Notes under the pieces: generated by a model
What the model was told of the DNA's origin: nothing
The model's database searches: none
What the model saw: the letters and a program-made list of their open reading frames with translations, nothing else
In this document: positions 1,813 through 46,073 of the stretch, piece by piece
How positions within the stretch are numbered: the stretch's first letter is position 1
How the letters are laid out: the number at the start of each line of letters is the position of its first letter
NCBI RefSeq assembly: GCF_031769215.1
Contig: NW_026782156.1
Location: 62,001-126,000, forward strand
Length of the DNA: 64,000 nt
Source of the DNA: Ylistrum balloti
Lineage: Eukaryota
Reading direction: 5' to 3'
Translations under genes and position numbers: made by a program

Positions 1813-1939
1813 CTTCAGATAACCTTGGGTATCTACGAGTAGGTTTTCTGGTTTTAAATCACGGTACATACAATCCAAATTATGTAAGTATTCCAAGACC
1901 AATACTATTTGTGCAGCATAAAACCTGGAATGCGGCTCA
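1813..1939 (-). CDS. Pka-C1: PKA catalytic subunit, mutually exclusive exon 6B: (S)[42 protein letters not shown]
   Basis: 127 nt; acceptor ctttttgacag, donor AAG|gtacgg; contains the YRDLKPEN catalytic loop; same length and phase (2 in, 0 out) as vertebrate PRKACA exon 6. Confidence 0.95.
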
Positions 1940-2114
1940 CTGTCAAAAAGAAAAAAATGCACAATACATATGTATAGCATTCTATAACAACATGATGCAT
2001 CAACCAAACTATATTAAGGGAGTGAAGGTTAGAGGGACACTGGGAATTGGGGATCACACATATACCACAGGTTGGAAACATTCCTCATCAGCACAGGCAA
2101 AACCTCTTACTTAC

Positions 2115-2241
2115 TTTAAGATAGCCATGAGAGTCAATTAGTAAATTCTCTGGCTTGAGATCTCGGTAAATGAGATCCAAATAATGGAGATATTCAAATG
2201 CCAATACTATTTGAGCTGCATAAAACCGGGAATGTGGCTCA
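2115..2241 (-). CDS. Pka-C1: PKA catalytic subunit, mutually exclusive exon 6A: (S)[42 protein letters not shown]
   Basis: 127 nt; acceptor tttttcctacag, donor AAA|gtaagt; YRDLKPEN loop; paralog of 1813-1939. Confidence 0.95.
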
Positions 2242-4248
2242 CTGTAGGAAAAAAAGACACATTGATGATTAGTACAGGCGGTCAGCTATTCTACCAAGAA
2301 AAAGGGCATATGGGGATGTGTTATTGAATGTGGTCAACTGTGGTCAAGAACAGTAAAAAAAACCGGGTCAAGATAAAATTTGAAATGATAACTCTTTCTC
2401 CCTCATAACATGTCATTTATATATTTTTTTAAAATCATTTAAAATTACATTTAAAATCTGAAAATATTGTTTCCAAAAAAAAACAGTTCCATTGGAAATG
2501 TTCAAGTATAAGTAAGGTAATAATAATTTTCTTTCTTTTAACATTTCCTGGTTTCCCATATAGACAGGGCTTGAAGTCCATAATTCACAAGTTAACTGAT
2601 TATAAATATTATAAATGATTATTTCCACCATGCTGCTCAAACATTTGACATCTGAGACTTGAAATTTAAGTACAGCCAATTAACACAACCCCATCTCAAA
2701 GAAGGATCAGAAATCAATGTTGATGTTTAAACATTTTCGGGCAATGATGTTTGTGAAGACAATCAATAAACACTGTTAGAGTTGAATTGTTCATAGCAAT
2801 GAAAACTACAGTAGATCAAATGTACACGTATTATAAAATTTCAAATTCAGTAAAGTTTTGAAAAATGTATACAACTAATTCATAGTTTTAAATTAGTTTT
2901 GTGGGTTTCAAAGATTAATTTCCTAGGAAACATTCTTCCAATTTCCAAGATTTTCCTATATGTCAGAAATGAGTGACAAAAATCAATACTATAAATTCCA
3001 GATGTGAATGCTTAATGTGAAAATAACATAAATGTAGCTTTCTATTATACAGAATTATATTCTGTACTATTTGATAGTTTCTGTAGTAAAAAACAATCAT
3101 CTGTTTTATATAAGAGTCCTATTCAAGAATGTTAACATTTGACCTACAAAGGAAATGTCACTTTTAAAATTATTTCCATTAAAATTGCAAATTGACTGAA
3201 AACCATCTGTAAGATACCATAACAGAGAAAATATTTTCTCTGTCTTGTATCAAAGAGAGTATAACAATCTGAAAATAACTGTATATCAAACGATAAATGG
3301 ATATGAAGAAATAATTTCACAACTCGAGTCTAAACAAATGGGAGAAGAAGAAAAGAATGTGATGTATATTATAAAGTGCTGTATGGTATGACAGAAATTG
3401 GATTATGAATGATATGAATGACTAACTGAAAATGAAAAGTTTTAATTAATGGCTCTGGTATGTTCTCACCAAGTGACCATAGCTGAATATGAACCTATAG
3501 TTAGAATGATTTAGAAAGATAACTCAATATTAAAGCAGATCCATACAATAATATGTATAGATACACAGAATCACAAGAATCCGTTGTTTTGCTGAAACTT
3601 ACTACATTGTGTTCTCCCCTTATAATAAGCAAATAATCATAAACAAGGGTCTGCATTCTGTTCCCATAATCTGAATTTTAGAAGAAATTCCTCAAGGTTT
3701 AAAAACTCATATTAATCTCCAAATTTTCCTTTTTTTCAACAATTAAGCCAAAACTTTTTCAAAATTAGATTTTTCTGAATAAGGATTAGAGAGTCATTCA
3801 GATTCCATACTTTGTGTTGCAATGGAAAAATACAAAATTTGACAATCTTTGAACAGTTCATTTAATGAAATGTTTACAATAAAAATTATCATAATCTTGA
3901 TCTATGTCACTAGCTCAAGCTGCCAAAATTATCCCTTATCTTCATCTATTTTTCCCTTCTCTCTCTTATATAAGGACTTTACTTGTACATTACACATGTA
4001 ATCTGCAATCATTTTAAAGCATGTATATATATTTTCTTATATCCCTGCATATATATTTATTTCTTTATGTACTCTTAAATGATTGTACATGTACAAAAGA
4101 CAGTGAATAACACCTTTCTATACAAATTTAATTTATTCATATTTATCAAAATTCTGATCTTGAATTCATAATTCATAAGTTACCACTTTAAGGTAATATA
4201 ATCACACTGATGTTTACTCAATTCAATTCATCTATCAGTTGCTTAAAG

Positions 4249-5057
4249 AAGGGCTGTAACGAGTACCCATGTACCAGTATACGGGTCGGTTTTGAGAAAT
4301 AACCAGTCTGAAAATATGTACCCAGATACCTGTCAAAATAGGAAACATTCTGTCTTCCCTCAGTGTTTACATTTCAGATCATTTAAGTAATACAATATCT
4401 CACTCAATTGTTCTGTTTTCATTTACTTTGGATGACACTTTATCTGTTTGTTTCATTTCCACATTCAACATTGTCATACTTTAGTCTTCTCACTACCACA
4501 ATTCATTTTGGGAACCGTCAAACATGTGTTTACACAGCAGACTTGTGTACTGTATTTTACCCTGTTACCATGGATAACATGCAAGGATTCCCGAATTTCT
4601 CGTTTGAATTAAACAACATTCTTATTCGTTTATCTATGTTTTGATTACAGGTTGTTGGTGTTGTTGCTATGATGTCATTGTCGAGCACAATAACAATGTC
4701 TCATTCTCATTCAACTTCCTGTTGTAAGCAACATCATTGTACCATATTTTCGATAAGCTTGAGGGGGTTACGTTTTGTCAACTTTTGATCCAATGTGATT
4801 TGTCTCGAGATCATGTAAATTACAAAACAGTTGATAGATGCAAAGAAATGAACATAATAATATCATAAGTGAAGCATTGTGTTCATACAATGTATGGTAT
4901 ATGGTTGATTTTTATTCGTTACTGAGGTTACAAGCCCTTTTCAACATGGTAATACGATGTTTCATTATATGTCAGATAAAATTTGGGTACCTAGGTATCA
5001 GTCGGGTAATAAAATTTGGGTACCCTGGCCCAAAATTTTGTACCCGAGACAGCCCTA
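4249..5057. mobile_element. Non-autonomous hAT-like DNA transposon (MITE, about 810 bp) in PKA-C intron 5
   Basis: Imperfect terminal inverted repeats aagggctgtaacgagtac ... gtacccgagacagcccta; flanking 8-mers gcttaaag / ctttaaag (6/8 identical) consistent with a hAT 8-bp target site duplication; no transposase ORF. Confidence 0.65.
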
Positions 5058-5207
5058 CTTTAAAGCTTATTCCAGCCATTTCCATTTCAAAGGATTGTCC
5101 TTTGATTAATGTTTTCACTAAGTTTAGAGCTTCCATTTCATCCAAGTCAGATTTTCATTGCCCTATAAAACAGGTTACTTATTTCTGTGTTAGCTTAAAT
5201 AACATAC

Positions 5208-5290
5208 CTGAATCTTCCTATTCTCCTGAGATGTGAAAACATTTCTCCACCTGTCACAAACTCCAACACCATATACAAATTTGAGTTGTC
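5208..5290 (-). CDS. Pka-C1: PKA catalytic subunit exon 5: [27 protein letters not shown](S)
   Basis: 83 nt; acceptor atttcctcag, donor AG|gtatgt; near-identical to the PKA-C hinge region. Confidence 0.97.
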
Positions 5291-6229
5291 CTGAGGAAAT
5301 AAACAAAAAGTACAAAATCTTAGTGAAAATATACATAATATTTATAATGACAATGAAAATGACTCTATCACTTAATAGACCCAGAAAATTTTCTCACACT
5401 GACTGTAATGAGATCAGATAAACTCAGCCAATACAAAGCAAAGCACTACATTAATTATATATGCAATCAACATCTTTGGCCAATTTTCAGAGGGAAAATG
5501 GGCCTTATCCTTAATTGTGTATCGTGGGACAAGTGACCTGAAAGATTGAAGTAGTCCTTCTTCTAGAGATTCTCAGATCCAAACTCAGCAATTGTAGGCA
5601 ATTAATGAACTACAGGATGTAACGCAGAGCATAGTTGGGTAAAAGATAAAAGTTTTGTGGATACAGCATATGGGGTATGCCTCAAGCAAACAGACTGTGA
5701 ACAAAGGGCTTTAACTCTGTATACCGAGATCTTCATGGACTTTTTTTTCAGTTCTGATTGGTAACAAAACTATTAACAATCAGATAGAGCAATAACTCCA
5801 TCTGATCATCAATTCATATTTACACACTCTTCTTATTCTCATATTCTTTTTAATAAAGCTACAATAAGATGCCAGCTTAAGTACAACACTGGCAAGACCA
5901 TTTGACAAAATATCAAAATCATTGTCGATAGGTATCAATTAAAAAGTTTCAATGATTATCAGTATTATAAGGGCTTCAACAGGACAACACAAGGAACAAT
6001 GTGTACTTATAAATAGATTAATTCATAAATATGACTTACACAACAAGGGTTCATGCAGTATGTGTTGGGAGTTTCTAATGCACTGACATGTATTGGTAGG
6101 TGGCCAAGCTTTGTAAGCTTTGTTGTTTTCTAATTTGTTGGTTTACCAACACTTAAAAATTGTTTAGTATGACCTTCTGACCTTAATGGCATGACTTTGA
6201 TAACTAAATGGTAGAAAAATGTGACTTAC

Positions 6230-6328
6230 CTTGAAATGATACTCTAAACTAACAAGGAATGGAAAATTGATGGCTTGCAAAATCCTCTTTTCATTCAAAG
6301 TATGCTCTACTTGTTTTAATTTCACAAC
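6230..6328 (-). CDS. Pka-C1: PKA catalytic subunit exon 4: [33 protein letters not shown]
   Basis: 99 nt; acceptor cctattcag, donor AAG|gtaagt; alphaB/alphaC region of PKA-C. Confidence 0.97.
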
Positions 6329-7220
6329 CTGAATAGGAGAAAAAAAATATCTCCATTATTCACATCATAAAGGTAAATGTTCAGGAACACACACCATGAA
6401 ACCTAATTATGGTAACAAGTTAATAATTCAATCCTCATTCTATTAGTACATTCTGAATTATTCAGTGTAATTAGCAGTTACAATGTTGGCGTTGAATACA
6501 TATGGATCCATCTCCTTTAAGGTTTCTACTCCACGTGTGAACATATTACCTGTATCATGTCAACTCATTGAGCAAGATTCACCAAAGTTTTTTTAAAAAC
6601 AATATTTTTAGACAAAATATATCAACTAGGTCTCTACCACATGTACTTTTACATTAAGTTTCTAATCATGAAATCAATCTCTCCTGTAAGTCATTATCAG
6701 AAGACTGCTAACCAACTATAAATCAAGTATCAGAATAGTCATGAGGCTCATTTTTAACGATCGCATGTTTACCAAAGTAAAATGCACCAGTTATCCTTTG
6801 ATCATTATGAGCTACAGATGGACAAAAAAAAAAATAATAATCAAAATTGCTGACACTTAAACCAATGCATGACCTGTGATATTTATATATATTGTTTTAT
6901 GTTAGTTATATAACAAAAAAGGTGTCAGCATCTTAACTTTACTGAGACACCAAAAAATGTTTTTGAAGACATTTTGTATGGTGACCACTTATATTTTTGT
7001 GTGTTACTATCTTTTACTACTTATAGTTAAAGTGTTGGAAGATATTGTATGCGCTTCAGATGTATGAATTGACTATCAACATTTTGTCGTTGAAAACGTT
7101 TCTAAATAAACAATAATATAAATTGCTTCTCAAACCGTATTAAATGTCCTGTTAAATGCATGTCTACCCAGGAATCTAGAGGTCAAAACAAATCATATGT
7201 TCAGTCACAAAGAAACCTAC

Positions 7221-7349
7221 CTTTTGTTTGTCTAAGATTTTCATGGCATAGTATTCTCTGTTTTGCTTATGTTGCACCAACATGACCCGACCAAATGACC
7301 CTGTACCCAGGGTCTTTATCCGGTCGAAGTCATCAAGGCAGGCTGTGTT
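7221..7349 (-). CDS. Pka-C1: PKA catalytic subunit exon 3: [43 protein letters not shown]
   Basis: 129 nt; acceptor cctttacag, donor AAG|gtaggt; glycine-rich loop GTGSFG and the AMK catalytic lysine. Confidence 0.97.
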
Positions 7350-9271: not shown

Positions 9272-9333
9272 CTGTTGCGGGTGATCCCATTTGTGTGTGA
9301 AATCTTCTCTGGCTTTAGTTAGAAACTCCTTGA
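9272..9333 (-). CDS. Pka-C1: PKA catalytic subunit exon 2: (x)KEFLTKAREDFTHKWDHPQQ (alphaA helix); shared acceptor for all alternative first exons
   Basis: 62 nt; acceptor cttttattttcag, donor CAG|gtaaat; starts in phase 1 with TC; same size as PRKACA exon 2. Confidence 0.96.
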
Positions 9334-12300
9334 CTGAAAATAAAAGAAAAATACCACTGAATCTTTCATTTTCATGTAATGTGGATAAAGTTTTCTAAAC
9401 TCATTGTGGTTATAGATGTATTTTCAAAATACCATCTTAACAGTTGAGATATTTATAACTTTAAAGCAATGAATGATGATCAAAAAGTGGATGACAACTA
9501 TATATATGCCAAACTGCTACCCTTCCACAAAAAAAGAACACCACCAAAAAAACACAACATTGTCTTTATTACTATACATGTATAACTGCATATTCTTGTC
9601 TATAATGAAATATGTGACAATAATGAAAAAAAAATCTATCCCAATACAATTACAAAGCTTTTGTACTGCAGAAATAGAATTTAATTTCTTTGAAATCCGA
9701 TTCTACCATAGACAAGTTCAGTTTTCCAGCAATTATGTCCAACCCAAAAGAATCTGTAAATGTGCACACCAACTAAATAATTTCATTCACATATGGTCTT
9801 AGCTTCCTATATCTAGCTTCAATTTCCAACTTTGATTAAAGTATTACACAGGAATGGGATCAATATGGAAACACAAAATTTTTAATATCTTGTTAACAGC
9901 CACATAAAGAACACTGTCTGATGGGAAAGGATTCTAAACATACCAATTAATATGACTATGTGATATCCAGTATCATAAAAGTTATCAGTGATTTCTAAGT
10001 ACAGGTAAAAGTGACTTTATCTCTTCAAATTCAATGGCAACTGATTAAGAAACCACATGTACACCACAACAAAGTCAGATGAAACATTCCTATCTTAGTA
10101 ACAAAGATATGATCATGGGGCCAGATATATATGAAGGTGCTTATATTGATAATACCTGTAAGTAAGAAAAGAGGGGGCTAAAGTTGGACAGCCTAGTACA
10201 AAACATTTCTACAACAGCAACAACTCCTGTATGGAGAAGACTTCTTTGTACATTAAAATAAGAGCACTTATTAAGTATAATTATAAATAAATCTATCATT
10301 GTTCTACAATAACTTCATGCATGTGTTTCAATGATCAATGTTAATCAAATGAAGTTTTGATTAACCATTATATGAAGGTGTTAAATGAGACAATTTTTTC
10401 CAGGTTTTATCATCTGGTTAAGTGTAAATATATTCAATATTTATTATAACTATGAACATTACTCTATATTGTCCTTTTTATCATTGATTATACTCCTAAA
10501 AGATCCATTTATGACAGGTGTAATATACCCTAGTTTACATCAAGCAGAAATTCTTTTATAGACATATATAAAAATAAAAATTATCATTCATGACATGTCA
10601 GGTGTATTATAGTGTATAATAACTTGAGGTTTAGAAACAACCATCATTAGAAAATATGTATTTAGGATTACAGTGTGTAAGTATGTATTATAAAGTTAAG
10701 CTAGACCGACCCTGCATACACATATGCAAGTCAGGAAATTGAATTTACAAGATAAATTGTACCCTTTATAGTACTAAATTCAGAACAAGCTGTTTATTTA
10801 CCTCTGTTTACATGTGTATCAGGAATCACTCTGAGGAAAGCTTTAAGTAGTGTTAACAATGATCATTCCAAAATCTCATTATATTTCTCAGAATGAACAC
10901 TTTGTATTATAAATGATATATTAATATATCCACTTTCTGCAAATCTTTAAAATCTATCTCCCCTTATCTTGACCCAGAGTTTCCTTTCTATATATGTTCA
11001 GCAATAATTCAAATGATGTACAAACTTATTAGGAGTGAGCTAGCACTTGACATACAATATGAACTTCTTGATGTAATAGGAATTGTCCACTTGTCAAGGA
11101 GTCAAATGTGAATTTGTGTTCTCCTTGTGAAGGTTGTATATAAACTGCATCCATTAGGTTACTCTCCCACTGTTTTAGTAAACTGTAGCAAAGACAATGT
11201 GATCCTCATGAAGAAAAGATAAACACTTCAGTTTTTATAAACTTATAACAGGTCAAAATGTTACAAGATTACCAAGATATTTCACAAGCAATGTACACTG
11301 ATCTAGATGGATAACAACTGAACTAATGATGATATGAAGAAAATTCTCAACTCAAGCATTTTCAGTACGATTTTCAATTATACATCCATATTCAAACATG
11401 TTTATAAATTTGTATAACCAATATCAAATTACTGAACCATTAAGCAAGAATGAAAATCTTAACATCTGGCACATCAAAGGATCAAACCGACAATCGTCCA
11501 AGTGTGGTTTACATTTGCATATGGTATCACCTGGCATCATCAATGAATGAATGAACACACACATCCAGTGGACTTTTGACATTTCACTTTAAAACCCACA
11601 AAGCAAAACTCATTAGGGTGTCAAAAATACACTCTCAATGGTCTACTGAATGATCTGGCAGACAAACTGTTAGAGAAAATGTTGACAGAATTTCACAATC
11701 ACTCAAATGCTATTGTATTTACAGTGTTAAAAAACTTTGCTTCAGTGTTTATGGTGTGTACTACCTAATGCTGTTGATGAGTGCAAGTACGTGCATATTA
11801 AAGGGACTTACTAAAAATTTTAGGAATCAGTTTAGTGATATCTAGGTCACATTTGAAAACCAAATATACAATCAACAATTTGCAAGATTGAATTGTGGAA
11901 AATTCAGACAATTTCTGATTGAGAATGCCAACCATACCTTAAGTATATCATATATGCAGGAATGTACCTGTATGTTGTTTTGCAATGTTTAGTACAATGT
12001 TTTGCATCATAATTATACATGTTATTTATACTGTCACACCAATCATTTCTTACTTTAATTTTCTTCTAAAAAGCAGATAAATTAAAATCCTTTGTTTTAT
12101 TATCAAATGTCATCAACTATTGAAATAGAGCAGAGACTTTCCATGTATATCGATAGAGAGAGAAGCACAATATCATACTGTCAAATGACTGATCATGAAA
12201 AACTCCCTTACAGTGTTATATATGTAATGACGTGAACCGGTATTGCATTTTACACTACTTACTTTCGTAAAGAATACAATATTATCCAACATATTCATTT

Positions 12301-12660: not shown

Positions 12661-12706
12661 CGCTTTCTGCAGAATCTCCCTTTTTCGATGCAGCAGCATT
12701 GCCCAT
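12661..12706 (-). CDS. Pka-C1: PKA catalytic subunit first coding exon N1: MGNAAASKKGDSAES(V), Gly2 myristoylation type
   Basis: 46 nt, ATG..AGC G|gtaggt, phase 1; matches the MGNAAxxKKG N-terminus of C-alpha and invertebrate N1. Confidence 0.95.
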
Positions 12707-14427: not shown

Positions 14428-16489
14428 TTTGTCAGCAGATGAACTTCCCGCTTTAATCACTTTACGGAAAACAACGAAGAGTGCGAGAATATACGAGAGT
14501 TCAGCAATCGAGGGGGATTAGACAGGGCGAGATTCCAGATTACGAGGGGAACCAGACAGGAAACAAAATCATTTCCATGGTAGCGTGGAAGACCTCCCCC
14601 GTTCACTGTTCACCAAGTGTCATAGCAATGAAATAATTTGGTTATTACACATAGATATTTCAGCGAAATTAAACAAAAGATATAAACAGTTTCCATGAAT
14701 TCAGTACACAAGACTAATTAGTAATTTTACACGGGGGTGACAATGTCCTTTATCACATTTTCAGCACTCGTCGACATCCTACCCAATAAAGATTTCGTCT
14801 AACCTTGCTTCCGCATTACTGGTATCTGCATAAACAGTCACAGCGCTGAAACAATTGTGTTGCACAAATAATGGCCCACGTCAGTCATGAATTAATTACT
14901 TTCCTTTTAAACTTTAATATATATCGTGGAAGCGTTAGTTAATGAAATCAACAATGCTATGCTGGTTATTTTATTGTCTTGTAAAGGTCATATGCTAAAA
15001 GTTAAAAACAAACAAACAAGCAACAAAAAAAACCCCAAACAGACAAGGAAACATTTATCTTAATTTTTAAAGCAAGATTACAGCAAAAGAGTGTATATAT
15101 ATATAGCAGTATCATACTAATTCCCAGTATACGACAACCATGGACATGTTATATTTAGCCAATTGTCCATCTTGTCAACTTATCACATGTCAGTCTCAAA
15201 AGGTAACCCCGAAGGCCATACAGACACCTGATTATGATAAACAAATGTACATATGACGATCAATAACGTCGGGTCAATGATAATATCTCCTGCTTACCAT
15301 CACTTGTGTACCATTACCAGTTTCACCTGGTAAACTGTGTTGATAATGTTTATATAGACGAACTGTCTGATAACGATTTCGTTATTTACAGTTTGGACAG
15401 TGTGCAGCAGAACGACTTAGCATCGGCAACCTTCGGCAGTTGACGTAAACGAGAAAATAACGAAAAGTGGTAAAGGTTCCCGATTGGATGACGAATTTGT
15501 ATGATGTTTCTTAGATGACTCATTACAAGGACGGATTCTCAAATTGACAAGCCACATAAATTTTACCCTATGATTTTCCCATCATGGATGTGAATTATCG
15601 ATACTTCTACCGGTTTGCGAAAAATCACAATTAAACCTGTTTGAGCATAAGATAACATCTCGCGCGTCATCCACTCATTTTCGACCTAAAGGATGTCATA
15701 ATCAAAATGAAATCATCTCACAGTTGTCTTTCTGACAGATATATATAACATTAAGACAGATAAACAAACAAATAAACAAAAAATACAGTACAATCCCATC
15801 GAATTGAAGGATTTGAGAAAAAAAAAAGGTAGCTGACATATAGTTGACATGTGGACGTAACATTCAGGTGCACATACCGAGAAAGAAAATCTATTTGCTC
15901 TTATCAGGGACGTTCATAGAGATATACACATATTTAAAAATCTACAATTATTTAAACAGATTTTTTTTCTAACGTGACCAAAGTGTCAGAATTTTGTAGC
16001 CTTAGGCTATCATACAACAGGAAAAGTTTGGTCGACAGTCGAAATGTTGCAGCAACCAAAGAGTGCTATCGATAAACATGATAGTTAAAAGTGATAACTT
16101 GCAATATATATCGATACAACAATCGATTCTCATGTCAAATATTTATATGAGGAAGGAGCAGATGGCGGATCAATGGAATAGGTTTGATTAAAGCTATACA
16201 CATATAATTATATATATTTGTCTTAAACAAACAAACAAAACGACCGAGGTCAAATCCACGTTATGTAGGATATCCTCTTGCGTCATGTCATCATTTGCAT
16301 ACGTGATCTTTTGTTACTGTCTAAATATGGCTTCACAGGGCTTGCAGTAAGTGTAAAATAAATGTACGTACAATCCCAATATGCACCTTTTAATATGTAT
16401 ATACGACGTCACACAATGTCGACCCTTCTCTATTCACAGGAAGCATGACGTGCAAGTATGCTGTGTGCGTGACCTCCTCCGTGAGCGTA

Positions 16490-17225
16490 TGACATCAGTC
16501 GCTGTGTTGCCTTCCTCAGTGTCATGACATCAGTCAATGTGTTTGCCTCCTCCGTGAGCGTATGGCATCAGTTAATACGTTGCCTCCCTCTGTGTCATCA
16601 TGACATCAGTCAATGTGCTGCCCTTCTCCGTGTAAGTATGACATCAGTCGCTGTGTTGCCTTCATCAGTGTCATAATTACATCAGTCAATGTGTTGCCTC
16701 TCTACGTGTTGGTATGACATCAGTCGCTGTGTTGCCTTCCTCCGTGTCATTATGACATCAGTCAATGTGTTGCCCTCCTCTGTTTCATCATGACATCAGT
16801 CAATGTGTTGCCTCCCTCTGTGTCATCATGGCATCAGTCAATGTGTTGCTCTTCTACGTGTTATTATGACATCAGTCGCGTCACTGTGTTGCCACCCTCA
16901 GTGTCGAAATGACATCAGTCAACGTGTTGCCCTCCTCTGTTTCATAATTACATCAGTCAATGTGCTGCCCTCATCTGTTTCATCATGACATCAGTCAACG
17001 TGTTGCCTCCCTCTGTGTCATCATGGCATCAGTTAATGTGTTGCCTCCCTCTGTGTCATCATGACATCAGTCAACGTGTTGCCTCCCTCTGTGTCATAAC
17101 TACATCAGTCAATGTGTTGCCTCCCTCTGTGTCATCATGACATCAGTTAATGTGTTGCCTCCCTCTGTGTCATCATGACATCAGTTAATGTGTTGCCTCT
17201 CTCAGAGTCATCATTACATCATTCT
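16490..17225. repeat. Minisatellite, 38-nt unit tgacatcagtcaatgtgttgcctccctctgtgtcatca, about 19-20 copies
   Basis: Directly visible tandem array; about 13 exact TGACATCA plus TTACATCA/TGGCATCA variants. Confidence 0.95.
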
Positions 17226-17851
17226 ATGTGTTGCCATGCTTCATGTCAGTATGGCATTAATGAGTGTAAAATAGATAACATAAATGCACAGCGATTAAAA
17301 CTTGCCATATTAATCGAACCACGGATAATTGACAATGCCTTATATCTGTGGTATGTGTAGATCTGTATTACGTGCCTTCTTTATCCCCGGTAACATCCCT
17401 GCAATGACCACTCGTACAGAAATACATACCTAACAATCTAACTATCCATTAGCAATGCCCTGTCCCTATTTGCTTGTATGCGGCACTTGTTCCCCTACTT
17501 CTTTCTACACTGACAATTAGATCCCTGTAAATGCCACAGATATTAGATCAGGTGATCGATGCCGTAAATAATCCGTCTGGGGGTGGTAGAACCGTTTACT
17601 AGGTAATCAGCATGTTTCCATTTGACAGAAAATGCCAAAATAGGGCTTCACTGTTAATGTTTGGAGTAAGACTTTTAAAACACTGATTTCAGGACTGCAA
17701 TGTTCCACGAGACAGGCGCAAAAAAATCGACTTTCCTTTTTCAAGATTTTTTCTTTCGAAAGCGAGATACAATAAATTACATAACATTGCATAAATAGAC
17801 ATTCAAACATGTCAATGGAGGGCACGTAGTATGTAAAACACTGTAACAACT

Positions 17852-19314
17852 AGGAGGGACATACTGTTGTGTTGTATCACGGGAATCACAGGGAGGGACA
17901 TACTGATGTGTTGTATCACGGGAATCACAGGGAGGGACATACTGTTGTGTTGTATCACGAGGAGGGACATAATGTCGTGTTGTATCACGGGAATCACAGG
18001 GAGGGACATACTGTTGTGTTGTATCACAGGGAGGGACATACTGTTGTGTTGTATCACGGAAATCATAGGGAGGGACATACTGTTGTGTTGTATAACGGGA
18101 GTCATAGGGAGGGACATACTGTTGTGTTGTATTACGGGGAGGGACATAATGTTGTGTTGTATTACGGTATGACAGGGAGGGACATAATGGTGTTGTATAC
18201 AGGAATCATAGGGAGGGACATACTGTTGTGTTGTATAACGGGAGTCATAGGGAGGGACATACTGTTGTGTTGTATTACGGGGAGGGACATAATGTTGTGT
18301 TGTATTACGGGGAGGGACATACTGCTGTGTTGTAACACGGGGAGGGACATACTGTTGTGTTGTATCACAGGGAGGGACATACTGTTGTGTTGTATCACAG
18401 GGAGGGACATACTGTTGTGTTGTATAACAGGAATCATAGGGAGAGACATACTGTTGTGTTGTATCACGGGGACCACAGGGAGGAACATACTGTTGTGTTG
18501 TATCACAGCACCACAGGGAGGGACATACTGTTGTGTTGTATCACAGGAATCACAGGGAGGGACATACTGTTGTGTTGTATCACAGGGAGTGACATACTGT
18601 TGTGTTGTATCACAGGACCACAGGGAAGGACATACTGTTGTGTTGTATCACAGGGAGGGACATACTGTTGTGTTGTATCACGGGAATCATAGGGAGGGAC
18701 ATACTGTTGTGTTGTATCACAGGGAGGGACACACTGTTGTGTTGTTTCACGGGGATCACAGGGAAGGGACACTATAATGTTTTATCACATTGAGGGGCAT
18801 AATGTTGTATCAAATTGACCACAGGGGGGGATACTGTTGTGTTGTATGACAGGGAGGGACACACTGTTGTGTTGTATGACAGGGAGGGACATACTGTTGT
18901 GTTGTATGACAGGGAGGGACATACTGTTGTGTTGTATGACAGGGAGGGACATACTGTTGTGTTGTATCACTGGGAGGGACATAATGTCGTGTTGTATTAC
19001 AGGAATCATAGGGAGGGACATGGTGTTGTGTTGTATCACGGGAGTCATAGGGAGGGACATAATGTTGTGTTGTATTACGGGGAGGGACATACTGCTGTGT
19101 TGTATCACGGGGAGGGACATACTGTTGTGTTGTATGACAGGGAGGGACATACTGTTGTGTTGTATCACAGGGAAGGACATACTGTTGTGTTGTATCACAG
19201 GGAGGGACATACTGTTGTGTTGTATCACGGGGAGGGACATAATGTCGTATTGTATTACAGGAATCATAGGGAGGGACATAGTGTTGTGTTGTATCACGGG
19301 TATCATAGGGAGGG
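17852..19314. repeat. Minisatellite, 30-nt unit agggagggacatactgttgtgttgtatcac with an optional 9-nt insert (39-nt variant)
   Basis: Directly visible; a degenerate break at about 18770-18830; both unit lengths are multiples of 3, which explains the long repetitive ORFs. Confidence 0.95.
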
Positions 19315-20247
19315 TTAAGGTTTGTTAAGGACATTATGAGGGACTATTAGATATGTTTAATCTAGGATCGGCATTTCACGTGAACACTTACAAAGTACAC
19401 CTATTTCGTTGGCCATTTTTGCTGACCTTTACGAGGAATCCGGACATTCTTTGACAGCTAATTTAAACAGACATTTACTTTTCTTTTGTTGTAGGTGACA
19501 TTTAGCTTTAAACAATTTTCCGACTTCAGTTTTAGGAGAGATATTTCAGTTAGACTAAAAGCCAGAGATTTCCATGTCGTGGCTCTAATACACTCAAACA
19601 CGTCATTTAGACAAATGACTTCATCAGATATCGCGGCTGATGTTGTGTTGTACTAAAGTAACAAGAACCCAAGGTTAACCGACGTCTAAGACCAACAAAC
19701 ACTGTAAGTTGATAGACGATCGGCTTTACAGATGCAATATATACTTCTGGAGAATCCCATGATCCCTATATACCGTACAAAATTATTTCTAAAAGTGTAA
19801 ATGCGACATAGAATATTTGTTATTGTCTGACAGAACATCCTCCGCATTTGCAAATACGTACGTTTACTCTAGTATTGTCATTGAAACGCGAGTAGAGCAT
19901 TGACTATTGTCCTGTTCGATCTATAATGGGACCTTGCTTTTGTCTGAAGAGTTGGAGGCCTCTGGAAACAATCAAAATTCTAATTTTAGACGTAATCTAC
20001 GAAATAATCTCGACACGAGTCATTAACGAGATTTAAGAAACCGACGAATATGACTCATGTCGTATACCGTGGTTTTTACAAAGGATAGGCCGACGAAATG
20101 TTTACGAACATTAACGGCCAATGATAGTGATATAAAATTAATGCTTGAAATAATTCAAGCTTTTATTGATAGTAAGTATCCACTATGCTAGTTTCATACA
20201 AAGCACTTCACACAAGCCAATGAAAGCCCCCCTTACATAATACTTAC

Positions 20248-20473
20248 TATCCCATAAATACAAACGGTGCAATTCCCGCTTTGTTCGTTCGTCTCGGACA
20301 CGATTCGTATCCCGTGTGTCATATTTTCTGAAACTAAAAGCATGATGGCCCCTTCCTTCGATTCTGAGAGGGGGTAGTTCGCCTCCACTTCCGGTCCTGT
20401 TTCGATTGTCTGCCTGCTGTTGGGCTGCCCTTCTCTTCTTTTCAGAATCAAATAAGTCGAAAAAGAAATCCAT
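20248..20473 (-). CDS. Candidate long alternative first exon of PKA-C (75 aa): MDFFFDLFDSEKKRRAAQQQ...RELHRLYLWD(I)
   Basis: aataATGG context, 226-nt open frame with higher GC than its flanks, ending in phase 1 at a consensus GAT A|gtaagt donor; joins exon 2 in frame as ..LWD-IKEFL. Confidence 0.7.
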
Positions 20474-21843
20474 TATTTACAAAGTATTGGTTGAAGATAA
20501 TACACACTCTCTTTGTATACGGTTCACCAACTTCTACGTTACACTATGGGTCACACACGGGGCACATATTTCCAGAATTAATTCACTACCAACACAAAAC
20601 AAGATGCTAGCCTTAGCCGATAACAGCTTGAGAAGTAAGGGCTTGCTTTTCCTTCGGGTCCTGTAATATGATCCTCCCCTTACAGACGCCGTCCGTTGGG
20701 ATAACCTCGTTCTTTACCGTAACACGTGTGTGTAGTAATATTTTAGTTTTCCCTTGACGGGACATCCAATATAAAGTTGCGTGATAGGCCAAGTCCTATG
20801 TATTACGGTGTAAATTTGATGGTGGCGAATCCCTGACTAACTAACAGTAGGACTTTCTCCACCATTGGGCCGTACTTGGGAAACCAGGTGTGACTAAACT
20901 GGAACCTGACACTCTTGATTGATGTCCCATTCACACTGTCACACGCTTGTAATATATAGATACACAGGTATATCCGTCTGCTAGCAATAATTGTTTTTGC
21001 ATTCTATTGAGCGACAAAATGCCAAAATAACCTAGTCTCGTTTCCGATCTACCAATTATTTGATTCATATATAATGCCTGTTCATTTGAGATAAAAAAAG
21101 AATAAGACACGGTTCGTATTATCGGTGCACTATAAAAGCTAGACATGCGTATTTCGGCGGGATCCAGTTACGGACCCACTGAACCCAAACAATGGCCTTT
21201 AGGTTGTGTTTACTATTTATAGCGAATAAAGGGACAAAAATAGGTATGAAAGGAGCCATTTCCCGGTTTAACTTAAGTGGCGTGTGATATTGCGTGTGAA
21301 ACCGCTCGGAACAGAGAGTCGTTGAAATTGCTTTTTAAAAATTATTTTTGATAAAAGTGCAAAGCATATTAATACAACACTTCCACCGTTACATGTACAT
21401 ATGTAAGTTAATTAATGGCACTGTCAGTCATCATATTGGCATATATATACCACGTAATGACGGAATTCATATTACATAATCTGGTAGAGAGTATCTGGCG
21501 TGCAGCCATTTATCACATGTGCAAGTATGGAAACTTAACACATCAAATAAATAAACGTCCTGTGCTTGGTTGTCTCATTCACTGAAGTTATTAAATGGTT
21601 TTGTGGATGTAGGAGTTCTCCGTCTTGTATGCGATGTGTTGATAATCGTTATATAGAAACCAAAAACCGTCGTTAATGGAAATGGCCAAACATTGTTTAT
21701 AAACGATTACATGAGAGTGTGCCATAAGTTTAATTTAAACACATACATATAGACCAAACTCGAGGAACTGACTATTAATCTAGAGACTATACATGGCACA
21801 TACCGAAAGTAATCTAACGACCAGCACGCGTAGACTGTGAAAT

Positions 21844-22170
21844 GGAAACTATTCCAGGATAATTTCGCCACCCGCATCATGTAACACGGAAACTATTCCA
21901 ACGTAATTATGCCACCCGCATCATGTAACACGGAAACTATTGGAAGTAATTTTGCAACCAACATCATGTAACATGGAAACTATTCCAAGGTAATTATGCC
22001 ACCCGCATCATGTAACACGGAAACTATTGGAAGTAATTTTGCAGCCAACATCATGTAACATGGAAACTATTCCAAGGTAATTATGCCACCCGCATCATGT
22101 AACACGGAAACTATTGGAAGTAATTTTGCAACCAACATCATGTAACATGGAAACTATTCCAAGGTATTTT
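21844..22170. repeat. Tandem repeat of alternating 44/43-nt units (87-nt higher-order repeat)
   Basis: catcatgtaac starts at 21875, 21919, 21962, 22006, 22049, 22093, 22136 (spacing 44,43,44,43,44,43) with alternating sequence variants. Confidence 0.92.
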
Positions 22171-23592
22171 GGCAACCCACATTACGTGACCGCAACCAAT
22201 GCATGGGAACCTGGCGACCATTTTACTATGAAAACTGAGGTGGTAACCACTGTTTTACTGCCTTTTTAAGATAAAAAAAGTGTTGCTAGGTAACCGATTT
22301 GTCAAAACCGATATATATGAAAATTATTGATGGTAAAACAGCGCTTACGGTGTATTCGATAGGACAACTTTGCCGAGATAAGCATTACCATAGAAGTATA
22401 CATGTCTTGAAATCGATTTATGCTAGATATCCTGTCTGGCCTGCTGCTGTTTCCCTATCCCGTGTTACAAATAGAAATTTAATAGGATTTTATATAATTG
22501 AACAAAAGTTGTAGCTGATAACCCAAAACCACACAATATAGGCACGCCCTTCATGTAATTTTTATTGCCAGGAGTTCCATTTGCGTGTTAGCCAATCCTA
22601 CCTCCATAAACACATACCTATGGACATGTAAACACAAACCTCAGTGTTGAAGGGAGGAAGGCAGCATGGCGTTGTGTGCTTACTTACCTTACAAGTTTAC
22701 AAGGAATTAATGTAATTATTCAGTATGGGACTTTGTTGAAATTATTAACAGTATTGATGTAATTGACGAAACACACATGAAAATGGGGTAATTTGTACAC
22801 TTCCTAATTTTCTGTCTGATAAATAATTCATTTGAGAAGAGGAAATCACGCAATTACAGATACACTGGCCATAATTAGATTTTAACCTTATTACACAGAT
22901 TGGTGTCCTGATGATGTCATGTTACTTGTTGCCAACGGACACTTATCTTCGCCAAACGAGATTCGAAGCTCAGCAGGGACAGATTTTTTTATATCTTTCA
23001 AATATCTTTATTCTGACAATAAACGGATTGAAGTAAAACATTTTTTGATAGATAGTAAAAGAAAGAAAGAAAAAAAAATTTAAAAAATTAAATCTCATTT
23101 TTATTTTCGTACCAAGTGTTGAATCCTCATACATCAACAACAACTCGACCACCATCACGTTTACAGGCTTCCACCAGCTTCTACTCTCTGCTTAGGCTGA
23201 GATCAGATTGTGCAGCACGTTCCCTAAAGACACGTGACGGATTGGAAATCCATGCCTAATACTCCAATCCGATTCCGTGGACATATTTCCGGATTGTCTC
23301 GAGGACGCTTGAGAGATTGGGTGGTGGCTGACCCAGGCTTTAGGATAAAACTTCCATTAGAGTGGAATCTAATTCCAGCTAGTATTCATTTACCTCAAAT
23401 TAGCTTCATCATTCTTATAGAGGTACTCCAAACAGTGGGAGATCGGACGCATCTCAAAAACGGATTTTGGTCCAAAAATAAAGAGACTCGTGACAAAGTG
23501 TTCCAAAATCGATCTTAAATGATCTTCTTTATCCACTGGTAGTAATTTTTTATGCAGACGCTGTACAGGTCAACTAATGTTTAACAATGTAT

Positions 23593-31210: not shown

Positions 31211-33266
31211 TGTCGATTACGTAAGGCCTAAATATATTTTTACTTCTGCACGAAGGCTTTAAAGCATCTTTTGTTCAAGATGTTTATTAATATCCAATCA
31301 AAAGGTCGAAAATTCTCCGCCCATTCTGCGATCATATAGGCAGTTCGCTGGCATTGTTGGTTTTTAAAATCTCTTCGAAGCTATAAAGAAGAGTATATAT
31401 TCAAACCAGTGACAGTTGAATTGCTGAAGCCAGGGAAGAGATAGAAAGCAAGCAATAAAGTAAAACAGTATTAATCAGCATTAAAAGTCCCAGTACTGAA
31501 TCAACAATAAATGTATCCGTTTTATTCGTAAGATATACAGTGTACATGAAATAGATCATGTTAACATATACATGGATACAATATAGCGATGTTCAGATTC
31601 TAGCAAATCATCCTTTTGTCTATCATGGACTTACCAACTCTGTTAAAAATAAAACGTTTTTTCATAGATATAGAAAAAAAATCTCAACATTATCGATTGA
31701 TCTTTTCTTGGTACAAAACAGTTAAAAACTTTACTTGCATAATAGAATGTCCAGGTTTTCATTTTCTCAAATTCACCATTGCTGGCCGGTCGCAAAAATG
31801 ATAATACAAATCGAAAATTTAAAAACAATTGACTCATAATAACAGAAAATGTTTCAGTCCTTATCTCTAATTTTCAGGTTAAAATATTTTGGTTAATATT
31901 TTAATTATATCAAAATGACACAAGGTGAATGTCACGTATATAGATAGACAAGTCTAGGGGACACTCGGACTAATAAATTGGACAGGATCCAGTTGTAATT
32001 GTCACAAAATGTGTTCAAGCATTAAGTATGAAGAGGTGCCGTCCTATATAGAGACAAGGTGCCAGCTATAGATCTGATAGCATCTGAGTAGCTGTTAACT
32101 CAATGTGTTGTGGCCTTGACACCAGTTGGCTACAGTTGAAACAATGACACACGAAAACCATGGCTCTTTAAAGAGATATGATGTTATCAGCGATCCAATG
32201 TTTCAAAGAGAACATTTCGAGCATTGTAATATAACTTTGTGGCACGTGTGTCCGACATGAACATGAACCGGAAAAAAATACTAGAATTTCGTTGTCGGTA
32301 AATGATATCGAGATTCTACAGTCTTGTATTAATTAAACTGGCAATGATCTGTACGGACTTTTAGATATCGTTTAATTGTTATCAATCGTAAAAGACTCTA
32401 GATGGGAATTACATTTTATTAGAAGAAAAAAACAGAAAATGATTTTCCGTTGAAATGGAAACTCAATTCGTAAACGTTATTGAAGGAAAGGTAATTTATG
32501 GTGGCCCCTCCCTTACAATTCTGCGGCTAACTTTAACCCTCTGTGATGTGATAGTATGATTATAATTAAGGACGTCACATCTTTATGTTTCATTCCATTT
32601 ACTGGCAACATTTTGCTCCACTATTTTACATCATATTTGTCTAATATGACGTGAGATATTGACATTGTGACAGCAATATTAAAGAACCGAATTTAAAAAA
32701 AACGTTTCTTCACAAAAATATTTATATTTGCAGGTGATATAAGTTTATACTGTTGAAAGAAACACGTTTTGAAGGACATAAATACAGAAGCATAGCAACA
32801 GATAATCCGCTTCATCAGGCTTTATAACATCACAAAAGTACAGGTGCTCGCTCATACCTTCCTTATCCGAGCTGCCACCCTACTATCATACATACAGGTA
32901 CAATTATAATGGTAAGCAACAGCAAATACGATGTAAACAGACTCACAAGCAAGCAAGGTACCATATTAAGTTACCTCTTTAATCTCGCCTATACCCTAGA
33001 CGATATTGATTTTAATCAATTAAACACCTGTCATAAACATATCGAATGAAATCAACTGTAGATTGCACAGGTGTATTCATTCCCACAGAAAAACCAACAT
33101 GTTTTAAACCAAGAGAACATGTTTTATACGAATCAACACATGAGAACATTTCAGTTCATTTAGTTCACTTATGTGCTATATGTGTTACTGTGTAAATACA
33201 TATACAGGATGCTGAAATGACACAATAGACTTAAAAGAATTCATTTAATAAAACAAAGGTACTTAC

Positions 33267-45879: not shown

Positions 45880-46073
45880 NNNNNNNNNNNNNNNNNNNNN
45901 NNNNNNNNNNNNNNNNNNNNNNNNNNNNNNNNNNNNNNNNNNNNNNNNNNNNNNNNNNNNNNNNNNNNNNNNNNNNNNNNNNNNNNNNNNNNNNNNNNNN
46001 NNNNNNNNNNNNNNNNNNNNNNNNNNNNNNNNNNNNNNNNNNNNNNNNNNNNNNNNNNNNNNNNNNNNNNNNN
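45880..46073. other. Assembly gap (194 N)
   Basis: Run of n characters. Confidence 1.

What the first reader, a model, noticed from the sequence alone, without database searches (positions are those of the whole stretch)
20248..20473. 75-aa N-terminal extension ending in LWD, reminiscent of vertebrate C-beta2
Seen: a long open frame with a consensus phase-1 donor giving ..HRLYLWD-IKEFL. As I recall, human C-beta2 has a long non-myristoylated N-terminus ending ..HTALWDRS-MKEFL. A shared H..LWD just before the alphaA helix could indicate an ancient or convergent docking motif in a mollusc.
Basis: partly seen in the sequence, partly recalled or inferred. Interest (0 to 1): 0.7.

Follow-up and report, generated by a model that had tools for sequence, protein, structure and literature searches.

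The report
Conserved long alternative first exon of PKA-C
This is a real, strongly conserved alternative first coding exon of a mollusc-type protein kinase A catalytic-subunit gene that swaps the short lipid-modified N-terminus for a 75-residue leader; its resemblance to the vertebrate C-beta2 leader is one of architecture, and common descent is not shown.

Summary
On the minus strand, ATG 20473 opens 75 codons plus one base and ends at A|GTAAGT. That phase-1 donor fits the phase-1 acceptor of PKA-C exon 2 (9333), giving ...HRLYLWD-I-KEFL.

It is the only such ORF-plus-donor in the window (0.12 expected by chance). Thirteen related copies exist elsewhere, including Potamilus streckersoni (bivalve; KAK3575920.1, an orphan "hypothetical protein, partial" ending at the same donor). 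Conservation starts at the ATG and stops at the donor. Substitutions are overwhelmingly silent: 35 of 41 against the closest relative, pS 0.74-0.99 against pN 0.13-0.19 in distant pairs.

The exon lies 7.7 kb upstream of the canonical myristoylated exon 1 (MGNAAAS..., 12706). The leader has an invariant N-terminal M-D/E-F-x-x-x-L-F-D helix, a variable Q-rich linker, RxRxxS with invariant Ser29, and a confident helix (53-74) running into the A-helix.

Splicing to exon 2 is inferred, because no RNA data were reachable.

The link to vertebrate C-beta2 is only partly supported. Trp is kept in 12 of 14 copies but sits at -2 from the junction, against -4 for human Trp59 (the invariant Tyr72 is at -4). 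The exon order differs, and no sequence similarity beyond chance was found. This is a new member of a known kind, of moderate interest.

The parts
20248..20473 (-). Alternative first coding exon ('exon 1L') of the PKA catalytic-subunit gene. It runs from the ATG at 20473 through 75 codons plus the first base (A, 20248) of the split Ile codon.
   Evidence: sequence. (unique in the window; 0.12 expected). (13 homologues). (conservation confined to the exon; silent substitutions dominate). (the only within-species variant in the exon is synonymous).
20242..20247 (-). Splice donor GTAAGT, phase 1.
   Evidence: The same position and phase are kept in other genomes as A|GTAAGT, A|GTGAGT, G|GTGAGC, G|GTAGGT and A|GTAAGC. 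Protein similarity ends here.
20447..20473 (-). Codons 1-9, MDFFFDLFD: the invariant N-terminal hydrophobic/acidic helix start (M1, F3, L7, F8, D9 invariant). There is no Gly2, so it cannot be N-myristoylated.
   Evidence: alignment A3. (AF2 helix 3-26). (A at -3 of the ATG in all 9 loci).
20387..20404 (-). Codons 24-29, R-N-R-T-G-S: a basophilic RxRxxS motif with invariant Ser29, followed by ELPP. It is a candidate phosphorylation site inside the disordered linker.
   Evidence: Ser29 invariant in 14/14; Arg at -3 and -5 in most. (pLDDT below 50 for residues 27-33). The function is inferred.
20249..20317 (-). Codons 53-75, ...NRVRDERTKRELHRLYLWD: a confident amphipathic helix that abuts the junction and would extend the A-helix of the kinase. 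E67, L68, L71 and Y72 are invariant; W74 is present in 12/14.
   Evidence: helix 53-74, block pLDDT 86/79. (hydrophobic moment up to 0.75)..
12661..12706 (-). Canonical first coding exon 1-1, MGNAAASKKGDSAES + G|gtaggt (myristoylation-type N-terminus), 7.7 kb downstream of exon 1L.
9272..9333 (-). Exon 2 (TC + KEFLTKAREDFTHKWDHPQQ). It has a phase-1 acceptor (AG 9335-9334) and holds the start of the A-helix with the FxxxW anchor.
1813..7349 (-). Further kinase exons: exon 3 at 7349..7221, exon 4 at 6328..6230, exon 5 at 5290..5208, and two mutually exclusive 127-nt exons at 2241..2115 and 1939..1813. The rest of the gene lies beyond the window start.
   Evidence: (the 2243..2112 translation matches PKA C-alpha residues 139-182, E = 3e-20).

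Best explanation
The stretch 20473..20248 (minus strand) is a genuine alternative first coding exon of the single PKA C-alpha/beta-type catalytic-subunit gene.

How it works, with shown and inferred steps marked:
- Transcription from its own upstream start, about 7.7 kb 5' of the canonical exon 1, is inferred.
- Splicing from A|GTAAGT to the phase-1 acceptor of exon 2 is inferred from phase and position.
- The product would be a kinase whose 15-residue myristoylated N-terminus (MGNAAAS...) is replaced by a 75-residue leader that cannot be myristoylated (Met-Asp start, no Gly2).

The leader is modular:
1. An invariant N-terminal hydrophobic/acidic amphipathic helix (M-D/E-F-x-x-D/E-L-F-D) followed by a basic cluster.
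2. A variable-length Q-rich disordered linker carrying an invariant Ser in RxRxxS-ELPP, a likely phosphorylation switch (inferred).
3. A C-terminal amphipathic helix (...RELHRLYLWD) that continues directly into the A-helix.

The most likely mechanism is that the C-terminal helix lengthens the A-helix. It would place invariant Leu68/Tyr72/Leu73 on the core-facing side, over the empty myristate pocket. The tethered N-terminal helix would serve as an inducible docking or targeting element, giving an isoform-specific pool of PKA. This is the same logic proposed for vertebrate C-beta2/C-alphaL.

What is shown: the exon is protein-coding and under strong purifying selection in many lineages, including a bivalve. 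What is inferred: the splice partner and the function.
For: Sequence and chance. The ORF, the donor and the acceptor phase fit, and it is the only such configuration in 64 kb, with 0.12 expected.

Conservation.
- Thirteen homologues share 38-95% identity over the full length.
- Similarity begins at Met1, with non-conserved in-frame upstream residues, and stops at the donor.
- The donor is kept in the same phase in every locus read.
- Nucleotide identity is 0.63-0.84 inside the 225 nt against about 0.2-0.5 in the flanks.
- Differences by codon position are, for example, 13/7/41, with pS 0.74-0.99 against pN 0.13-0.19.
- Against the closest relative, 35 of 41 differences are silent.
- The one polymorphism in the exon in run X1 is synonymous.
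- A stands at -3 of the ATG in 9/9 loci.

Independent annotation. The GenBank annotation of Potamilus streckersoni ends a partial CDS (KAK3575920.1) at exactly this donor, split-codon base included.

Context. The exon is on the same strand and upstream of PKA-C exons 1-1, 2, 3 and onward. No other gene-like ORF lies between them. Joining exon 1L to exon 1-1 would be out of frame with exon 2 (my reading).

Structure. AF2 gives helix 3-26, a disordered 27-52 and a confident helix 53-74. The hydrophobic moment is high over residues 60-72 and continuous with exon 2.

Precedent. Alternative 5' exons are documented for vertebrate PRKACA/PRKACB, for invertebrate deuterostomes (some located 5' of exon 1-1) and for mussel.
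Against: - There is no direct transcript evidence. The only public run holding the stretch is genomic DNA.
- No protein in the searched libraries shows the leader fused to the kinase. The length filter and 50% clustering could hide such isoforms.
- In Potamilus no kinase exon lies within 10 kb downstream, and the exon is annotated there as an orphan hypothetical protein. Linkage to PKA-C is therefore shown only in this window.
- No conserved promoter motif was found upstream.
- The functional model (pocket cover, docking helix, phospho-switch) rests on analogy and on a prediction for the isolated leader only.
Confidence: 0.78

Rival explanations
1. The exon is the protostome orthologue of vertebrate PRKACB exon 1-2 / PRKACA exon 1-L. 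On this view a long, non-myristoylated PKA-C isoform, with an N-terminal inducible helix and an aromatic residue before the A-helix, already existed in the bilaterian ancestor.
For: - The overall design matches what Soberg et al. describe for C-alphaL/C-beta2: a long leader, no Gly2, a predicted helix, a disordered linker, and Trp close to the junction.
- The intron phase is the same.
- The invariant F3...L7-F8 here recalls the ...F-x-x-x-L-F30 stretch. Its L-F30 part is printed in the mouse peptide SRLFHRHS, and Phe30 is stated to be universal.
- LWD is shared.
Against: - The C-beta2 fragments score no better than shuffles against the family.
- The exhaustive profile search found only short invertebrate-type ORFs and one low-complexity hit.
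- The Trp register differs by two residues, -2 against -4.
- The helix has an acidic face here. From my own recollection of the sequence, unverified, it is basic in C-beta2.
- There is no equivalent of the conserved K/R21, because the helix starts at Met1.
- The exon order relative to exon 1-1 is reversed.
- Soberg et al. found no homologue in the invertebrate deuterostomes they examined.
Confidence: 0.2
2. The exon is a conserved first exon of a different, unannotated transcript, or of a small independent gene, that merely lies upstream of PKA-C and does not splice to exon 2.
For: - No junction evidence could be obtained.
- In Potamilus it is annotated alone as a partial hypothetical protein, with no kinase exon within 10 kb.
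- No full-length fusion protein was retrieved.
Against: - The CDS never ends in a stop. It ends in a conserved phase-1 donor, so it needs a downstream partner.
- In the window the only phase-compatible coding exon downstream on this strand that I could identify is PKA-C exon 2. No other gene-like ORF lies between 20.2 and 9.3 kb; the long ORFs there are minisatellite artefacts.
- The C-terminal helix is continuous in amphipathic pattern with the A-helix.
- Long alternative leaders are an established feature of this gene family.
Confidence: 0.1
3. It is a chance open frame, or a fragment of a repeat or transposon next to the minisatellites.
For: The exon lies between tandem-repeat arrays, and no family library recognises it.
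Against: - Contigs of run X1 cover it singly.
- It is conserved in many genomes, with silent substitutions strongly in excess and the start and donor conserved.
- Only 0.12 such ORFs are expected by chance.
Confidence: 0.02

Closest known systems
Vertebrate PKA C-beta2 (PRKACB exon 1-2) and C-alphaL (PRKACA exon 1-L) long N-termini (Soberg et al. 2017, PMC5526564; Soberg and Skalhegg 2018, PMC6143667)
   Same: Both are alternative 5' coding exons spliced in phase 1 to the invariant exon 2. Both encode a long leader (62-63 residues against 75) without Gly2. Both are predicted as a conserved helix followed by a disordered linker, with a conserved Trp-Asp just before the A-helix. The proposed role is also shared: an isoform-specific docking helix plus an aromatic cover for the empty myristate pocket.
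   Different: - The exon lies upstream of exon 1-1 here, and between exon 1-1 and exon 2 in vertebrates.
- Trp is at -2 rather than -4 from the split codon (Tyr72 occupies -4).
- The conserved helix starts at Met1 and has an acidic face.
- This leader has extra conserved blocks (RxRxxS-ELPP, FSFRKYD).
- No sequence similarity beyond chance was measurable.
- The authors found no invertebrate homologue.
Aplysia CAPL-A catalytic subunits with alternative N termini N1/N2 and internal cassettes A1/A2 (Beushausen et al. 1992 PNAS, cited; the 1988 Neuron paper is from my own knowledge)
   Same: It is a single mollusc PKA-C gene with alternative first exons. It also has a pair of mutually exclusive internal exons covering the RDLKPEN region, and the window shows the same pair (2241..2115 and 1939..1813).
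   Different: I could not read the paper (PMC48508 is not held). Whether N2 equals this leader is unknown. If it does, the exon itself is already described.
Mytilus galloprovincialis PKA-C isoforms from alternative 5' exons, including the sperm-specific isoform A0A8B6GIP6 (PMC13425070)
   Same: It is a mollusc, with one gene and several alternative 5' exons. The canonical MGN-type isoform exists alongside non-myristoylated ones, and the FxxxW A-helix anchor is kept (FTQKW there, FTHKW here).
   Different: The mussel sperm leader is 17 residues long, acidic and unrelated in sequence. No counterpart of it was found in this window. The 75-residue leader is not mentioned in that paper.
Invertebrate deuterostome 5' exons L1-L3, 1V2, 1V3 and p (Soberg et al. 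2017, Fig 1C)
   Same: They are long alternative first exons, some located 5' of exon 1-1 as here.
   Different: The relationship to this family is untested.

Membership tests
Alternative first coding exon of a PKA C-alpha/beta-type catalytic-subunit gene | Lies 5' of the invariant exon 2, on the same strand, within the gene's upstream region | tested here: met
   Exon at 20473..20248, exon 1-1 at 12706..12661, exon 2 at 9333..9272, all on the minus strand. The kinase identity is confirmed.
Alternative first coding exon of a PKA C-alpha/beta-type catalytic-subunit gene | ATG-initiated open frame ending in a donor whose phase (1) matches the exon 2 acceptor | tested here: met
   75 codons + A|GTAAGT; acceptor cag|TC AAG. 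The phase is conserved in all homologous loci read.
Alternative first coding exon of a PKA C-alpha/beta-type catalytic-subunit gene | Protein-coding constraint (purifying selection) limited to the exon | tested here: met
   identity drops at both exon ends, third-position changes dominate, and 35/41 differences are silent.
Alternative first coding exon of a PKA C-alpha/beta-type catalytic-subunit gene | Transcripts that join the exon to exon 2 | not testable with these tools
   Only one public run holds the stretch, and it is genomic DNA. The protein searches cannot see full-length isoforms from a 75-aa query, and the 50% clusters may hide them.
Vertebrate C-beta2 / C-alphaL long N-terminus (exon 1-2 / 1-L) | Long leader (about 60 residues or more) lacking the N-terminal Gly needed for myristoylation | tested here: met
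   75 residues starting Met-Asp.
Vertebrate C-beta2 / C-alphaL long N-terminus (exon 1-2 / 1-L) | Exon located between exon 1-1 and exon 2 | tested here: not met
   Here it lies 7.7 kb upstream of exon 1-1. The vertebrate order is taken from PMC5526564.
Vertebrate C-beta2 / C-alphaL long N-terminus (exon 1-2 / 1-L) | Disordered leader with one conserved inducible helix carrying a universal Phe (F30) and a K/R (position 21) | tested here: inconclusive
   A helix at 3-26 is predicted with moderate confidence, and F3/L7/F8 are invariant. No residue can correspond to K/R21, because the helix begins at Met1.
Vertebrate C-beta2 / C-alphaL long N-terminus (exon 1-2 / 1-L) | Conserved Trp four residues before the split codon (Trp59) | tested here: inconclusive
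   Trp74 is present in 12/14 but at -2. Position -4 holds the invariant Tyr72.
Vertebrate C-beta2 / C-alphaL long N-terminus (exon 1-2 / 1-L) | Detectable sequence homology to vertebrate members | tested here: not met
   The exhaustive HMM search returned no recognisable vertebrate sequence. Printed C-beta2 fragments gave p = 0.82, 0.08 and 0.80 against shuffles. This is a limited test, because the full vertebrate sequences had no tool reference.
Canonical myristoylated N-terminus (MGNxxxxK, C-alpha1/C-beta1/PKA-C1) | Gly at position 2 and the MGNxxxxK consensus | tested here: not met
   The leader starts MDFFF. The canonical exon is present separately at 12706 (MGNAAASK).

The most novel reading that the evidence does not exclude
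The leader family (M-D/E-F-x-x-D/E-L-F-D ... RxRxxS ... RELHRLYLWD) is the lophotrochozoan orthologue of the vertebrate C-beta2/C-alphaL exon. On this reading a long, non-myristoylated PKA catalytic isoform, with a tethered docking helix and an aromatic plug for the myristate pocket, dates back to the bilaterian ancestor. That is contrary to the published view that the long exon arose in vertebrates or has no invertebrate counterpart.
Probability: 0.2. Interest if true: 0.7.

Novelty: new member of a known kind. Interest (0 to 1): 0.45.

Why it matters
PKA catalytic subunits are almost invariant from exon 2 onward, so isoform-specific behaviour comes from the alternative first exons. The function of the long vertebrate C-beta2/C-alphaL leader is still unknown.

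This finding adds a second long leader, independently conserved and probably unrelated in sequence. It has the same layout: a terminal helix, a flexible linker, and an aromatic-rich helix abutting the A-helix. That gives a comparative handle on two open questions. One is which features are functionally required: an aromatic residue at -4, a tethered helix, a phospho-site in the linker. The other is what occupies the myristate pocket in non-myristoylated isoforms.

There is also a practical point. At least one annotated mollusc genome (Potamilus streckersoni) carries the exon as an orphan "hypothetical protein, partial", so PKA-C gene models in molluscs are probably incomplete. If the leader is already the Aplysia "N2" terminus or a routine RefSeq-predicted isoform, the novelty shrinks to the conservation analysis.

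Tried and rejected
1. RNA evidence. The look-up of sequencing runs returned a single run of unknown kind. Laying it showed a uniform 2.7-kb genomic contig, so it carries no expression or splice information.
2. Word-index protein searches. I queried with the 75-aa leader and with the 156-aa member P0009. Both returned only genomic read-through ORFs. The length window (at most 131 and 273 aa) cannot see a roughly 410-aa isoform, so the blank is uninformative.
3. Exhaustive HMM search with the 8-sequence profile. It gave 9 hits. All are short ORFs except one 1994-aa low-complexity protein, P0013, which I dismissed. No kinase-fused representative appeared, possibly because isoforms collapse into 50% clusters.
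4. Metagenome scan. The only hit, L009, is a GC-rich bacterial membrane-protein ORF that shares ELHRLYLW by chance. I rejected it.
5. Pfam gave nothing.
6. Synteny in Potamilus (L012). No kinase exon lies within 10 kb downstream, and the contig ends about 4.7 kb further on. This is inconclusive.
7. Upstream promoter conservation. No 8-mer is shared by five or more loci.
8. A counterpart of the mussel sperm leader, and other ATG/phase-1-donor candidates. There were none with support. The two weak candidates at 31665 and 11935 are unsupported.
9. Literature. The Aplysia 1992 PNAS paper and the 2021 C-beta review are not held. No held paper prints the leader motifs.
10. Steps left out. I did not run a full alignment with the human or other vertebrate C-beta2 leader, or AF2 of the spliced full-length isoform. 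Neither sequence has a tool reference, and I did not type long sequences from memory.
11. A FFAT-like reading of FFFDLFD (VAP binding) was considered and set aside. Position 5 is Leu rather than a small residue, and the pattern is not kept in the divergent members.

Full report
**1. What is at the coordinates.** The feature is on the minus strand. Reading 20473 to 20248 gives an ATG, 75 sense codons (MDFFFDLFDSEKKRR ... RELHRLYLWD) and one further base, A. GTAAGT follows directly at 20247-20242. The window carries a PKA catalytic-subunit gene on the same strand:
- the canonical first coding exon MGNAAASKKGDSAES+G|gtaggt at 12706..12661;
- exon 2 at 9333..9272, with acceptor ttttcag|TC AAG GAG TTT CTA;
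- exon 3 (GTGSFG) at 7349..7221, exon 4 at 6328..6230 and exon 5 at 5290..5208;
- two 127-nt alternative exons that both encode [14 protein letters not shown]...RDLKPENLL..., at 2241..2115 and 1939..1813.

The translation of 2243..2112 matches PKA C-alpha residues 139-182 at E = 3e-20. The donor leaves one base and exon 2 supplies two, so A+TC = Ile and the predicted join is ...HRLYLWD-I-KEFLTKAREDF. With the canonical exon it is G+TC = Val.

**2. More than chance.** I searched both strands of the whole window for ATG-initiated frames of at least 50 codons that run without a stop into a phase-1 GTRAGT donor. This is the only one. Markov-simulated sequence of the same composition gives 0.12 such cases at 75 codons or more.

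**3. Conservation.** The word-index search with the 75-aa translation found eight ORFs of 81-103 aa with 63-95% identity over the full length. An exhaustive HMMER search with a profile of these added much more divergent copies (P0009-P0012, P0014). A further search added P0015.
- All are genomic read-through ORFs.
- In every one the similarity starts at Met1. In-frame residues upstream, where present, are unrelated.
- In every one the similarity stops right after ...LYLWD. The next residues are S-K, S-E, G-K, G-E or G-R, which are the translation of A|GTAAG, A|GTGAG, G|GTAAG, G|GTGAG and G|GTAGG.

So the donor is conserved in position and phase. At the DNA level, identity to three distant loci is 0.63-0.79 inside the 225 nt and 0.2-0.5 immediately outside. 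Differences fall 13/7/41 on codon positions 1/2/3. Synonymous sites are saturated (pS 0.74-0.99) while pN is 0.13-0.19. Against the closest relative (95% amino-acid identity) 41 of 225 nucleotides differ and 35 of those are silent. The single variant inside the exon in an independent DNA run of the same species is synonymous (Thr64 ACA>ACG). All nine loci have A at -3 of the ATG.

One family member is KAK3575920.1, "hypothetical protein CHS0354_034682, partial" of Potamilus streckersoni (Unionida, Bivalvia). Its annotated CDS ends at exactly this donor, including the split-codon base. The exon is therefore a bona fide coding exon kept under purifying selection in many lineages, at least one of them a bivalve mollusc. 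I could not determine the species of the window. Its exon 3 lacks the one-residue insertion after Lys63 that Soberg et al. 2013 report for Lymnaea and Aplysia, so it may not be a heterobranch gastropod.

**4. Anatomy of the leader.** Alignment A3 has 14 sequences. It shows these blocks:
- An N-terminal block M-[DE]-F-[FI]-[FL]-[DE]-L-F-D, with M1, F3, L7, F8 and D9 invariant.
- A basic cluster, followed by a Q/H-rich segment of variable length.
- R-x-R-x-x-S with invariant Ser29, followed by E-L-P-P.
- F-S-F-R-K-Y-D, with D52 invariant.
- N-R-x-R-D-E-R-x-x-R-E-L-H-R-L-Y-L-W-D, with E67, L68, L71 and Y72 invariant.

Trp74 is present in 12 of 14 members. It is Cys in Potamilus and Phe in the most divergent member.

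AlphaFold2 on the leader alone, using this alignment, predicts a helix at 3-26 (pLDDT about 60-70), a disordered 27-52 (below 55), and a confident helix at 53-74 (block means 86 and 79) that ends at the junction. The helical hydrophobic moment peaks at residues 60-72 (up to 0.75) and continues through exon 2. There is no Gly2, so the product cannot be N-myristoylated. From general knowledge, Met-Asp and Met-Glu starts are typical NatB acetylation substrates.

**5. Most likely mechanism.**
- Shown: this is a conserved coding first exon with a phase-1 donor, upstream of PKA-C.
- Inferred: it has its own promoter and splices to exon 2. That bypasses exon 1-1 and produces a long-leader, non-myristoylated C subunit. 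Joining exon 1L to exon 1-1 would be out of frame with exon 2.

On an ideal alpha-helix continuous with the A-helix, Ile76 (equivalent to Val15), Tyr72, Leu73, His69 and Leu68 lie on the same side as the FxxxW anchor (Phe87 and Trp91 here). That side faces the kinase core and the myristate pocket. Leu71 and Trp74 lie roughly opposite. My reading is therefore as follows. The C-terminal helix lengthens the A-helix and covers the unoccupied pocket with Tyr72/Leu73. Trp74/Leu71 form a second hydrophobic stripe for another contact. The invariant N-terminal helix is a tethered docking or targeting element. Ser29 in RxRxxS is a regulatory, possibly auto-, phosphorylation site. These functional statements are hypotheses.

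**6. Comparison with C-beta2.** Soberg et al. 2017 (PMC5526564) and the 2018 review (PMC6143667) describe the vertebrate exon 1-2 (C-beta2) and exon 1-L (C-alphaL) leaders. They are 62-63 residues long, non-myristoylated and predicted to be disordered. The most conserved segment is an inducible amphipathic helix, with K/R at position 21 and a universal Phe30. Trp59 is nearly universal and is proposed to lid the hydrophobic pocket.

The architecture is the same: a long leader, helix, linker, then an aromatic residue plus Asp before the A-helix, with a phase-1 join. Four things do not fit homology or an identical docking role:
- Trp is at -2 here and -4 in human. That is about 200 degrees apart on a helix, and the invariant Tyr72 is the positional equivalent of Trp59.
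- The vertebrate long exon lies between exon 1-1 and exon 2, whereas this one is 7.7 kb upstream of exon 1-1.
- The printed fragments and the quoted tail score no better than shuffles against the family (p = 0.82, 0.08, 0.80), and the exhaustive profile search brought in nothing recognisably vertebrate.
- Soberg et al. found no homologue of exon 1-2/1-L in the invertebrates they examined. They did note other long invertebrate exons, some 5' of exon 1-1, which they did not study further.

I did not align the complete vertebrate leaders, because I had no tool-given copy of them.

**7. Other known relatives.** A 2026 paper on Mytilus states that multiple C isoforms can arise from one gene by alternative 5' exons. 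It verifies a sperm-specific 17-residue acidic leader (PMC13425070). That leader is unrelated, and no counterpart exists in this window. Aplysia C subunits with two N termini (N1/N2) were published in 1992 (cited), but the paper is not held, so I cannot exclude that N2 is this leader. A 2025 survey of 640 PKA-C sequences across phyla discusses N-terminal variants in arthropods only. No held paper prints the leader motifs.

**8. Limits.**
- No RNA data could be reached.
- No leader-kinase fusion protein was retrieved. The tools' length window and clustering make that blank uninformative.
- Linkage to PKA-C is shown only in this window, because the other contigs are short, or in Potamilus end too soon.
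- The metagenome scan gave only a bacterial chance match.
- The search of earlier findings returned nothing for this genome region.

**9. Verdict.** This is a real, deeply conserved alternative first exon encoding a long non-myristoylated PKA-C leader (confidence about 0.8 for that reading; splicing inferred). The specific claim of a shared H..LWD docking motif with C-beta2 is only partly supported. The parallel is architectural, the register and exon order differ, and homology is unproven (about 0.2). It is a new member of a known kind, of moderate interest.

Noticed in passing
window 2241..2115 and 1939..1813 (minus strand): Two adjacent 127-nt exons both encode the [14 protein letters not shown]...RDLKPENLL...GYLK segment of the kinase, with different residues ([12 protein letters not shown]...IDSH against [12 protein letters not shown]...VDTQ). 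Each has its own acceptor and donor. The length is not divisible by 3, so they must be mutually exclusive. This matches the A1/A2 cassette pair known from Aplysia PKA-C (from my own knowledge).
   Followed up: partly
window 16489-17235, 17853-19314, 21844-22182, 24129-26816: Large minisatellite arrays flank the leader exon: 38-bp x 20, 30/69-bp x 43/21, 44/87-bp x 8/4, and 46-bp x 58. They explain the strong GC-skew peaks at 18-20 kb and 24-28 kb and all the long 'ORFs' there. Run X1 shows raised, fragmented contig depth over 18.6-19.3 kb, as expected for a repeat.
   Followed up: partly
L012:10001-10223 (Potamilus streckersoni, JAEAOA010002039.1; protein KAK3575920.1): The GenBank annotation carries the homologous leader exon as an orphan 'hypothetical protein, partial' of 74 aa. 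It ends at the phase-1 donor and is followed by a (CT)n run. It is probably an unlinked first exon of the PKA-C gene, that is, an incomplete gene model. Here Trp is replaced by Cys (LYMCD).
   Followed up: partly
window 7349..7221 (exon 3): The segment ...[14 protein letters not shown] has the same length as human ...LVKHKETGNHYAMK. It therefore lacks the one-residue insertion after Lys63 that Soberg et al. 2013 report for the two heterobranch gastropods Lymnaea and Aplysia. This hints that the source organism belongs to another lineage.
   Followed up: no
window 20560-20585 and L014 about 640-670: An upstream patch (GTGAATTA..ATTCT..GGAAATATGTG), about 85-115 nt 5' of the ATG, is shared with the closest relative only. 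It could be part of the promoter or 5'UTR of the leader exon. It is not found in the more distant loci.
   Followed up: partly
window 31665..31635 and 11935..11812 (minus strand): These are the only two other ATG frames that end in a phase-1 [AG]|GTRAGT donor upstream of exon 2 (MKKRFIFNRV|G, and a 41-codon hydrophobic frame). They have no supporting evidence and are probably chance.
   Followed up: no
window 45880-46073: A run of 194 N (assembly gap or mask). I left it untouched.
   Followed up: no
window 63049-63414 (minus strand): This ORF is made of a degenerate tandem peptide repeat (...NRDRSVVQQRSISCSTNKD...). It is probably another minisatellite rather than a gene.
   Followed up: no
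L009 (Ga0070740_10053275): A GC-rich bacterial membrane-protein ORF contains FRELHRLYLW by chance. It was the only 'hit' of the metagenome scan and is unrelated.
   Followed up: yes
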